Below are positions 53,006-54,361 of a stretch of DNA of 64,000 nucleotides, in pieces. Positions within the stretch are counted from its first letter, which is position 1, and the number at the start of each line of letters is the position of its first letter. Under the pieces are notes generated by a model, which was given only the letters and a program-made list of their open reading frames with translations, did no database searches and was not told the origin of the DNA. The stretch is taken from NCBI GenBank assembly GCA_033442325.1, contig JAWQFM010000009.1:1049729-1113728 (forward strand), given 5' to 3'. The DNA is from Salpingoeca rosetta. Lineage: Eukaryota; Protista; Choanoflagellata. The position numbers and the translations under genes are program-made.

Positions 53006-53840
53006 TCAAGGGATGGCAAGGTCGATGGCGGCTGCCCAGGCCTGCAGCTCGCTGGAGGAATCAGACGGGCTGCGGAGAACAAACGTGCGCGCGCTTGTCT
53101 CCAGCAGCAGCTCTGGTGGGCTCTGCTTGTCCAGTAACCGCACACGCTTGATGTCGGACAGGCGAATGAACCCACACGGCGCCTCAAACGAGTGCTTGTG
53201 GTACGACAACTGGCCATCCTCAATCTGGAACCACCTCTTCTTGAAGGCTGTGTTCACCTTGCCTCGTTTCAGCAGGTAGCCAGTCAAGTCCTCCTGCTTT
53301 GGGGGTTTCTCCTCGCATGGCGTGATGACGGGCATTCCACCTTCCAGCCCGTACTTGTCCCGAATCTTCTGATGCCGCTCATTCAACTTGGCCCTGCATG
53401 GAACGGCGGAGGGGGGACGGGGGCAAAACAGAGTGGAGATTGGTGGTGGGTTGCATTTGTTTCATTGCTGTGATCGTGCGAAGCACGTGCAGAGCAAACG
53501 TGTGCTCGGGCGTACTTCATGCCACGTTTTCTTCACCACACTGTTTGCCCCAAAGTACCATGCAACACACACACACACACGCACGCACGCACACGCACGC
53601 ACGCACACACGCACCTGCGTTGTTGCTGCTTGATTTGTCTTTGCCGACGGGCCTCTTCCTCCCGCAGCGCCTCCTTGTCCTTTTTCTTCTTCTTTTTCTT
53701 CTCCTTCTCTTGTGTCTTGGGATCAAGCTCGTCCTGCGTCGTCAAAGGCAAAGTACGGCGTGAGAGTGTGTGTGGAAATGAAAGCGTATCGGGTAGTTTG
53801 GACAACACGCACAACGGGTACTGTCATGCGCAGCACAAAA

Positions 53841-53920
<80 letters not shown>

Positions 53921-54361
53921 GCAAACACACAAACACACAAACACACAAACGCACAAACACACAAACACACAAACACACAAACACACAAATACACACACAC
54001 ACACAAACACACCAACACACAAATACACGTACAAACACAGCACATTGACAAACTCACGGCGAAAGGCATGGATTCCTGTGCCTGACGCATCTTCGAGCCC
54101 ACCATGTGGCTCATCAACACTGCATTGCGACCACTCAGTCAGGACACAAGAAACAACAAGCAAGCAAGCAAAAGGCAAGGAAGGCGCGCAGGTCCTGAGG
54201 ACAGTCCTGAGGACACATCCAATAACAGACAACAACATACAACAACAGACAGCAACATGCAACAACAACATACAAACAAAATACAGACAAGAACACACGC
54301 ACCTCCTAAACAAACAACCCATCATTCATATCCATCCAGCCAACTCACTCTGTTCCGCCAT
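53006..54361 (-). CDS. Complexin-like protein fused to a C-terminal PH domain (193 aa; exons 54361-54349, 54119-54058, 53733-53615, 53393-53006)
   Basis: GT-AG, phase-consistent splicing gives MAEQMLMSHMVGSKMRQAQESMPFADELDPKTQEKEKKKKKKKDKEALREEEARRQRQIKQQQRRAKLNERHQKIRDKYGLEGG...LTGYLLKRGKVNTAFKKRWF...LQAWAAAIDLAIP*. IRDKYG is the complexin SNARE-binding central-helix signature. Confidence 0.8.

What the first reader, a model, noticed from the sequence alone, without database searches (positions are those of the whole stretch)
53006..54361. Complexin-like SNARE regulator whose C-terminal membrane anchor is a PH domain
Seen in sequence: the ORF track shows only the last exon, but four phase-consistent exons give an N-terminus MAEQMLMSHMVGSKMRQA, a charged accessory helix (DPK...KDKEALREEEARR), a central helix ERHQKIRDKYGL, and then a complete PH domain. 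Established: animal complexins begin M(A)xxxxKxMVG-like, bind assembled SNARE complexes through an IRDKYG-type central helix, and end in an amphipathic helix or CAAX box that tethers them to membranes. Complexin-like sequences have been reported in choanoflagellates, so presence alone is not new. Inference: the lipid tether here is a PH domain with a basic beta1-beta2 signature (KRGKVNxAFKKRW), suggesting phosphoinositide-gated control of exocytosis in a non-neuronal unicellular organism. I cannot tell whether this fusion has already been described.
Basis: partly seen in the sequence, partly recalled or inferred. Interest (0 to 1): 0.88.

Follow-up and report, generated by a model that had tools for sequence, protein, structure and literature searches.

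The report
Choanoflagellate complexin with a PH-domain tail
A small gene of the choanoflagellate Salpingoeca rosetta encodes a relative of complexin, the protein that regulates vesicle fusion at animal synapses. In place of complexin's usual membrane-binding tail it has a lipid-binding PH domain, and a 2014 survey listed complexin as apparently missing from this organism.

Summary
The window is Salpingoeca rosetta. The gene (PTSG_04890, minus strand) has four GT..AG exons, and RNA reads or RNA contigs show all three junctions. The spliced product has 193 aa. The public model (179 aa) starts 14 residues too late and lacks MAEQMLMSHMVGSK.

AlphaFold2 gives one 50-residue helix, a roughly 20-residue flexible linker and a PH domain. 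Pfam PH scores 42 bits. The nearest solved folds are TAPP1 and DAPP1, and the K-x-G-x6-K-x-R-W-F basic motif is invariant across relatives.

Complexin homology is likely but below Pfam's cut-off for S. rosetta itself (Synaphin E 0.009). It is stronger through the Microstomoeca roanoka orthologue: Synaphin E 3e-5 over profile positions 1-83, and rat complexin-1 residues 4-78 as the best PDB hit (E 3e-4).

The same helix-plus-PH architecture occurs in five named choanoflagellates and about eight environmental sequences.

SNARE binding and lipid binding were not tested. I could not read Yang et al. 2015, so I cannot say whether the fusion is already published. Burkhardt et al. 2014 called complexin "apparently missing" in S. 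rosetta.

A second, PH-less complexin-like gene may lie on another contig. Earlier notes of this scan flagged it.

The parts
54349..54361 (-). Exon 1 (13 nt): ATG plus MAEQ and the first base of Met5. Absent from the public gene model.
   Evidence: The sequence shows a GTGAGT donor. The 54349/54119 junction is seen in 5 + 18 RNA reads and one contig.
54058..54119 (-). Exon 2: (M)LMSHMVGSKMRQAQESMPFA, the complexin-like N-terminal segment. The annotated start codon is at 54090.
53615..53733 (-). Exon 3: DELDPK..., a K-rich stretch, then EALREEEARRQRQIKQQQR(R). This is the accessory-helix region and the first half of the central helix.
   Evidence: It is joined to E2 and E4 in the 599-nt RNA contig, and loose ends at 54057 and 53397 read into it.
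53006..53393 (-). Exon 4: the end of the central helix, the linker, the PH domain and the stop codon.
   Evidence: ORF 53006-53386. RNA depth is 10-34x in two raw-read runs.
53351..53721 (-). One continuous predicted helix. It covers residues 16-65 of P0001, which are residues 30-79 of the 193-aa protein. The DNA span includes intron 3.
   Evidence: AlphaFold2 with a 14-sequence alignment gives pLDDT 95-98 for this helix.
53345..53380 (-). Central-helix core ERHQKIRDKYGL. R and K of RDKY are invariant in the family, and I/L/M, Y/H, G and L/M are conserved.
   Evidence: It aligns to complexin-1 R63-I72.
53285..53344 (-). Flexible linker EGGMPVITPCEEKPPKQEDL. Relatives have 11-27 residues between the helix motif and the PH basic motif.
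   Evidence: pLDDT is about 50 here. Spacing was measured.
53012..53284 (-). PH domain (residues 102-192 of the 193-aa protein) with the motif K-R-G-x6-K-K-R-W-F.
   Evidence: Pfam PH E 1e-10, 42-43 bits against a cut-off of 25.1. Model of 7 strands plus a C-terminal helix. Foldseek matches to TAPP1 1eaz and DAPP1 1fao score TM 0.77-0.81 by target.
54090..54326 (-). Alternative 5' form. In one 2024 run a contig runs unspliced from exon 2 into intron 1.
   Evidence: X10 record 2: depth 413 against 19.5 for the spliced E1-E2 contig. The two raw-read runs show about 0 depth there.

Best explanation
PTSG_04890 is the S. rosetta member of a choanoflagellate family of complexin homologues. The family keeps the N-terminal segment, the accessory helix and the SNARE-binding central helix. 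The C-terminal membrane-binding region of animal complexins is replaced by a short flexible linker and a PH domain of the TAPP1/DAPP1/GRP1 type.

Inferred mechanism: the central helix docks on assembled or assembling secretory SNARE complexes. The PH domain holds the protein on phosphoinositide-rich membrane, most likely the plasma membrane rather than the vesicle. That would concentrate the regulator where fusion happens and could make its local dose depend on PI(4,5)P2 or 3-phosphoinositide levels.

Shown here: the gene model, transcription and splicing, the helix-linker-PH fold, conservation of the architecture, and sequence similarity to complexin. Inferred: SNARE binding, lipid binding and any effect on exocytosis.
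For: - Gene model and expression.
- PH domain: Pfam 42-43 bits. The AF2 model has mean pLDDT 87.5. Best solved neighbours are TAPP1, DAPP1, ARAP3, PLEKHA7, centaurin-alpha1 and GRP1.
- Basic-motif residues K93, G95, K102, R104, Y115 and R153 (P0001 numbering) are invariant in 14 relatives.
- Complexin similarity in S. rosetta: Synaphin PF05835 is the best non-PH Pfam hit, E 0.0088, residues 19-68 against profile 29-77.
- Synaphin is the only Pfam family hit by several N-terminal segments (4 of 9, best E 7e-4).
- M. roanoka orthologue P0154: Synaphin E 3.3e-5, 24.6 bits, residues 38-122 against profile 1-83. By phmmer its best four PDB hits are all complexin-1. The top one is E 3.3e-4 and colinear over complexin residues 4-78.
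- P0154 is 44% identical to P0001 across the helix end and the PH domain, E 3e-31.
- A profile of the family's N-terminal parts against the PDB puts complexin (1kil_E) first at E 0.011; the next hit is at 0.79.
- In the alignment to complexin-1, EALR (39-42), R48, Q64, I66, R67, D68, K69, Y70 and G71 are identical.
- 16 sequences pair x-R-x-K-[YH]-x-[LM] with the PH motif 11-27 residues later. The named ones are S. rosetta, M. roanoka, S. helianthica, S. urceolata and M. brevicollis.
Against: - No Synaphin hit reaches Pfam's gathering score of 27 bits. S. rosetta itself scores only 16.8.
- The helix is charged and of low complexity, which inflates weak matches.
- A REKYGL-like string also occurs by chance in mitoribosomal mL38.
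- The first half of the central helix is not conserved: complexin Y52, R59 and M62 align to Q, L and R.
- The linker is much shorter than an animal complexin tail.
- No binding was tested or modelled.
Confidence: 0.7

Rival explanations
1. The protein is a small PH-domain adaptor with a generic charged coiled-coil. The IRDKYGL string and the weak Synaphin hits come from chance or composition, and the protein has nothing to do with SNAREs.
For: All Synaphin scores are below the gathering cut-off. Lys/Glu/Arg/Gln-rich helices give many weak hits, for example Prp31, MFAP1 and METTL3. A chance REKYGL occurs in mL38.
Against: Complexin is the top hit in three different searches. The match is colinear from the N-terminus to the end of the central helix. 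The motif is invariant although the rest of the helix is only 20-45% identical among relatives.
Confidence: 0.15
2. It is a true complexin homologue, but the PH domain is not a lipid anchor. It would bind a protein instead, such as the SNARE bundle itself, a small GTPase or G-beta-gamma.
For: A 2026 preprint models a PH domain of SNAP-47 resting on the SNARE bundle. Foldseek also lists the G-beta-gamma-binding PH domain of GRK2 among the top matches.
Against: The full basic motif of phosphoinositide-binding PH domains is present and invariant. The closest sequence and fold neighbours were solved with inositol phosphates bound. The GRK2 matches have rmsd of 8-10 A over longer spans.
Confidence: 0.12
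3. The four-exon model is wrong and the upstream exons belong to another transcript.
For: The public annotation starts inside exon 2. One run shows an unspliced form upstream of exon 2.
Against: Reads and contigs join all four exons in frame. Orthologue transcripts from other species carry similar N-termini on the same protein.
Confidence: 0.03

Closest known systems
Animal complexins (Cpx1/2; Pfam Synaphin PF05835)
   Same: Same order of parts: a short N-terminal segment, a charged accessory helix containing EALR, and a central helix ending I-R-D-K-Y-G. The protein is small, and a membrane-binding element follows the helix.
   Different: The tail is a folded PH domain on a roughly 20-residue linker, not a long disordered region with an amphipathic helix. 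The first half of the central helix differs. Pfam scores are below the cut-off.
Complexin 3/4 (farnesylated CAAX tail; from my own knowledge)
   Same: These are complexins with a dedicated lipid anchor at the C-terminus rather than curvature sensing alone.
   Different: Their anchor is a covalent prenyl group. Here the anchor would be a reversible, lipid-specific domain.
PH domains of TAPP1, DAPP1, ARAP3 and GRP1
   Same: Best sequence and fold matches. Same K-x-G...K-x-R-Hyd-Hyd motif and the same beta3 tyrosine.
   Different: In those proteins the PH domain is joined to adaptor, SH2 or GEF/GAP modules, never to a complexin helix. The lipid preference here is unknown.
PH-bearing SNARE regulators: CAPS/UNC-31, amisyn (STXBP6) and SNAP-47 (CAPS and amisyn from my own knowledge; SNAP-47)
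   Same: Same logic: a SNARE-interacting element joined to a PH domain that places it at phosphoinositide-rich fusion sites.
   Different: These are unrelated SNARE-binding modules (an MHD domain or SNARE motifs) in much larger or differently ordered proteins.

Membership tests
Complexin / Synaphin (PF05835) | Score over Pfam's gathering cut-off (27 bits) | tested here: not met
   S. rosetta scores 16.8 bits, E 0.0088. The best relative, M. roanoka, scores 24.6 bits, E 3.3e-5. This is an operational cut-off. Synaphin is still the top non-PH family.
Complexin / Synaphin (PF05835) | Colinear N-terminal segment, accessory helix and central helix | tested here: met
   M. roanoka residues 38-122 match profile positions 1-83 and complexin-1 residues 4-78, E 3.3e-4. 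S. rosetta residues 19-68 match profile 29-77. AF2 gives a single helix over residues 16-65.
Complexin / Synaphin (PF05835) | SNARE-contact residues of the central helix (R48, R59, K69, Y70; their importance is from my own knowledge) | tested here: inconclusive
   R48, K69 and Y70, and also I66, R67 and D68, are identical. R59 aligns to L and Y52 to Q. K is invariant and Y/H conserved in relatives.
Complexin / Synaphin (PF05835) | Binds the assembled SNARE core complex | not testable with these tools
   S. rosetta SNARE motifs are split by introns. No unaltered chains could therefore be given to complex prediction.
Complexin / Synaphin (PF05835) | Disordered C-terminal domain with an amphipathic helix or CAAX box | tested here: not met
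   It is replaced by a linker and a PH domain.
PH domain (PF00169) | Pfam score over the cut-off, and the PH fold | tested here: met
   42-43 bits against 25.1. Seven strands plus a C-terminal helix at pLDDT above 90. TM 0.77-0.81 to TAPP1 and DAPP1.
Phosphoinositide-binding PH subclass | Basic motif K-x-G-x(6-11)-[KR]-x-R-Hyd-Hyd in beta1-beta2 (motif definition from my own knowledge) | tested here: met
   The sequence is K-R-G-KVNTAF-K-K-R-W-F. These residues are invariant in 14 relatives and align with TAPP1.
Phosphoinositide-binding PH subclass | Actual lipid binding and its specificity | not testable with these tools
   This needs liposome or PIP-strip assays.

The most novel reading that the evidence does not exclude
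Choanoflagellates, which are reported to lack synaptotagmin, regulate secretion with a complexin whose presence at the fusion site is set by plasma-membrane phosphoinositides such as PI(4,5)P2 or PI3-kinase products. On this reading a lipid-gated, synaptotagmin-independent complexin is an early form of regulated exocytosis. The disordered tail of animal complexins would then be a later replacement, or both would be alternative solutions to the same tethering need.
Probability: 0.2. Interest if true: 0.8.

Novelty: new variant of a known kind. Interest (0 to 1): 0.55.

Why it matters
Complexin is older than synaptotagmin, and its original job is an open question. A 2026 paper turned to adipocytes because choanoflagellate exocytosis was judged intractable.

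S. rosetta is the choanoflagellate with genetic tools (my own knowledge), yet a 2014 survey listed complexin as apparently missing there. A corrected gene model gives a concrete gene to knock out, tag or mutate. The model has a complete complexin-like N-terminus and a PH domain in place of the tail.

The PH domain also suggests which membrane the ancestral-type regulator sits on, and that can be tested directly. The value drops if Yang et al. 2015 already described the PH fusion; I could not read that paper.

Tried and rejected
- **Complex prediction with S. rosetta SNAREs: not run.** Six-frame searches of the genome found only exon fragments of R-SNARE and Qa SNARE motifs and nothing for the syntaxin N-terminal or SNAP-25 families. 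No unaltered full SNARE motifs could be supplied.
- **Six-frame Synaphin search of the genome: no match.** It also missed the gene under study, so it says nothing about absence.
- **Fetching animal complexins for a profile-profile test: failed.** The N-terminal profile against 5.8 billion proteins returned only a family member and an unrelated bacterial protein with AKYGL repeats.
- **ESM Atlas look-ups.** These gave only generic single-helix matches and PH clusters (TAPP1/PLEKHA1, DAPP1).
- **Tree of PH domains.** It is too poorly resolved to say whether the neighbouring stand-alone PH gene is the source or a copy of the complexin PH domain.
- **Literature.** Yang et al. 2015, Burkhardt et al. 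2011 and Burkhardt 2015 are not held. No held paper contains the accession numbers. None of the hits for complexin plus PH/pleckstrin plus choanoflagellate/unicellular terms described such a fusion.
- **Read laying.** It skipped three repeat spans (52960-53005, 53558-53714, 53832-54033), so exon 3 depth is under-counted.

Full report
**What is there.** The window is from Salpingoeca rosetta. The last exon is 100% identical to NCBI protein PTSG_04890, named 'hypothetical / PH domain-containing protein', 179 aa.

**RNA evidence.** I laid two raw RNA-seq runs and two sets of contigs on 52960-54460.
- The tiny first exon is real. The 54349/54119 junction is seen in 5 and 18 reads and in one contig.
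- A 599-nt contig joins exons 2, 3 and 4 exactly as proposed.
- 19 and 34 reads that end at 53397 continue with the last bases of exon 3.
- Introns have zero depth in the raw-read runs. The first-mate orientation fits a minus-strand RNA.

The public model starts at the internal ATG at 54090 and so lacks MAEQMLMSHMVGSK. The ATG at 54361 has a good context (A at -3, G at +4), but many reads end only 7 nt upstream at 54368. Met5, Met7 and Met10 are in-frame fall-backs. One 2024 run also holds an abundant contig that runs unspliced from exon 2 into intron 1 (54090-54326). In that form an in-frame stop precedes MSHMVGSK.

**Fold.** AlphaFold2 with 14 relatives gave mean pLDDT 87.5. It shows one continuous helix over P0001 residues 16-65 (pLDDT 95-98), a low-confidence linker over 66-87, and a seven-stranded PH domain with a C-terminal helix over 88-177.

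**The PH domain.**
- Pfam PH scores 42-43 bits against a cut-off of 25.1.
- The best solved relatives by sequence and by fold are the PI(3,4)P2-binding PH domain of TAPP1, then DAPP1, ARAP3, PLEKHA7, centaurin-alpha1 and GRP1. Several of these were solved with inositol phosphates bound.
- The sequence K-R-G-KVNTAF-K-K-R-W-F fits the basic beta1-beta2 motif of phosphoinositide-binding PH domains. The motif definition is from my own knowledge.
- K93, G95, K102, R104, Y115 and R153 are invariant in all relatives.

Lipid binding itself remains an inference.

**Is the helix a complexin?** For S. rosetta alone the evidence is suggestive.
- Synaphin is the best non-PH Pfam family at E 0.0088 and 16.8 bits (cut-off 27), matching residues 19-68 to profile positions 29-77.
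- Complexin-1 is the best PDB hit for residues 1-80, at E 0.18.

Relatives make the case stronger.
- An exhaustive HMMER search and two word-indexed searches found short proteins with the same layout.
- Sixteen sequences pair a motif x-R-x-K-[YH]-x-[LM] with the PH motif 11-27 residues later. None of the long multi-PH hits does.
- The named ones are Microstomoeca roanoka, Salpingoeca helianthica, S. urceolata and Monosiga brevicollis (MONBRDRAFT_4861).
- The M. brevicollis model carries an insertion that looks like a translated intron (my reading of the alignment).
- Synaphin is the only Pfam family hit by several of the N-terminal segments, 4 of 9.
- The M. roanoka protein is 44% identical to PTSG_04890 from the helix end through the PH domain, E 3e-31.
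- That protein matches Synaphin at E 3.3e-5 over profile positions 1-83, starting at its likely first methionine.
- By plain phmmer its top four PDB hits are all complexin-1. The best has E 3.3e-4 and is colinear over complexin residues 4-78.
- A profile of the family's N-terminal parts ranks complexin first in the PDB at E 0.011; the next hit is at 0.79.

In the alignment to rat complexin-1, EALR 39-42, R48, Q64, I66, R67, D68, K69, Y70 and G71 are identical. Y52, R59 and M62 are not. I put true complexin homology at about 80%.

**Caveats.** No hit reaches Pfam's cut-off. The helix is charged and of low complexity. A REKYGL-like string occurs by chance in mL38.

**What could not be tested.** SNARE binding is the key functional claim. 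I could not model it because S. rosetta SNARE motifs are split among exons, and the six-frame search finds only fragments. For the same reason the blank Synaphin search of the genome means nothing: it also missed this gene.

**Mechanism (inferred).** The central helix would dock on the secretory SNARE bundle as in animals. The PH domain, on a roughly 20-residue tether, would hold the protein on phosphoinositide-rich membrane, probably the plasma membrane. Animal complexin tails instead favour curved vesicle membrane (my own knowledge). This would concentrate the regulator at fusion sites and could couple its dose to PI(4,5)P2 or PI3-kinase products. M. brevicollis is reported to lack synaptotagmin, so any such action would be synaptotagmin-independent.

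**Literature.** Burkhardt et al. [quoted passage not shown] No held paper mentions the accession numbers. None of the papers that combine complexin with PH/pleckstrin and choanoflagellate or unicellular terms described such a fusion. Yang et al. 2015, the obvious place for such a description, is not held. I cannot exclude that the fusion is already published for M. brevicollis.

**Context in the genome.**
- Earlier notes of this scan flagged another complexin-like gene with a Cys-rich tail on a different contig.
- My family profile found it at G000:C6:1717393-1717497, E 0.035.
- It encodes MAGLIAGLGAFLGGAFAV... followed by ...RRLDMRYKHGL. No PH exon lies within 10 kb, but a 100-N assembly gap follows directly.
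- Its exons alone give no Synaphin hit, so its status is open.
- The S. helianthica PH-fused protein matches PTSG_04890 best in the S. rosetta genome. S. rosetta therefore has a single PH-fused gene.
- A stand-alone 123-aa PH gene 7 kb away (45787-46107) shares the same PH motif at 41% identity. A tree of the PH domains is too weak to order these events.

**Verdict.** Complexin homology is likely. The functional reading is plausible but untested. I rate it a new variant of a known kind, with the caveat about the unread 2015 paper.

Noticed in passing
L014:1140-2140 (G000:C6, about 1717032-1718032): A second complexin-like gene in the same genome. Exon 1 reads MAGLIAGLGAFLGGAFAVRKAEQEIDDLVSDKNEAKATRKAES and exon 2 reads ...RRLDMRYKHGLDTHASS.... 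A (GT)n run and a 100-N gap follow, then an ORF ending CMMNRCCSCCC. No PH exon lies within 10 kb. Its N-terminus resembles those of the PH-fused proteins of S. helianthica and S. urceolata.
   Followed up: partly
window 54090-54326 (-): One 2024 run has an abundant contig running unspliced from exon 2 into intron 1. The cause could be an alternative start site or intron retention. It carries many upstream ATGs and an in-frame stop before MSHMVGSK. The two 2026 raw-read runs show almost none of it.
   Followed up: partly
window 45787-46107 (-): A stand-alone PH gene (P0031, 123 aa) lies 7 kb away. It has the same KRGKVNKAFKKRWF motif and is 41% identical to the complexin PH domain. No central-helix motif occurs anywhere else in the window.
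   Followed up: partly
P0051 (M. brevicollis MONBRDRAFT_4861), residues about 60-112: The public model carries an insertion of about 50 residues between the accessory and central helices. It looks like a translated intron and probably explains why Pfam Synaphin does not hit it at all. P0155 shows a similar read-through.
   Followed up: no
window 53830-54040, 53560-53615 and 52840-53005: Long (GT)n and (GTGC)n-like microsatellites fill introns 2 and 3 and the 3' flank. They produce many spurious Cys/Val-rich and His/Thr-rich ORFs on both strands.
   Followed up: no
window about 55450-64000 (L011:1-8914): The upstream neighbour is annotated as a very large gene of 4835 aa with no Pfam hit on record. 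Other notes of this scan describe it as an EGF/adhesin-like receptor.
   Followed up: no
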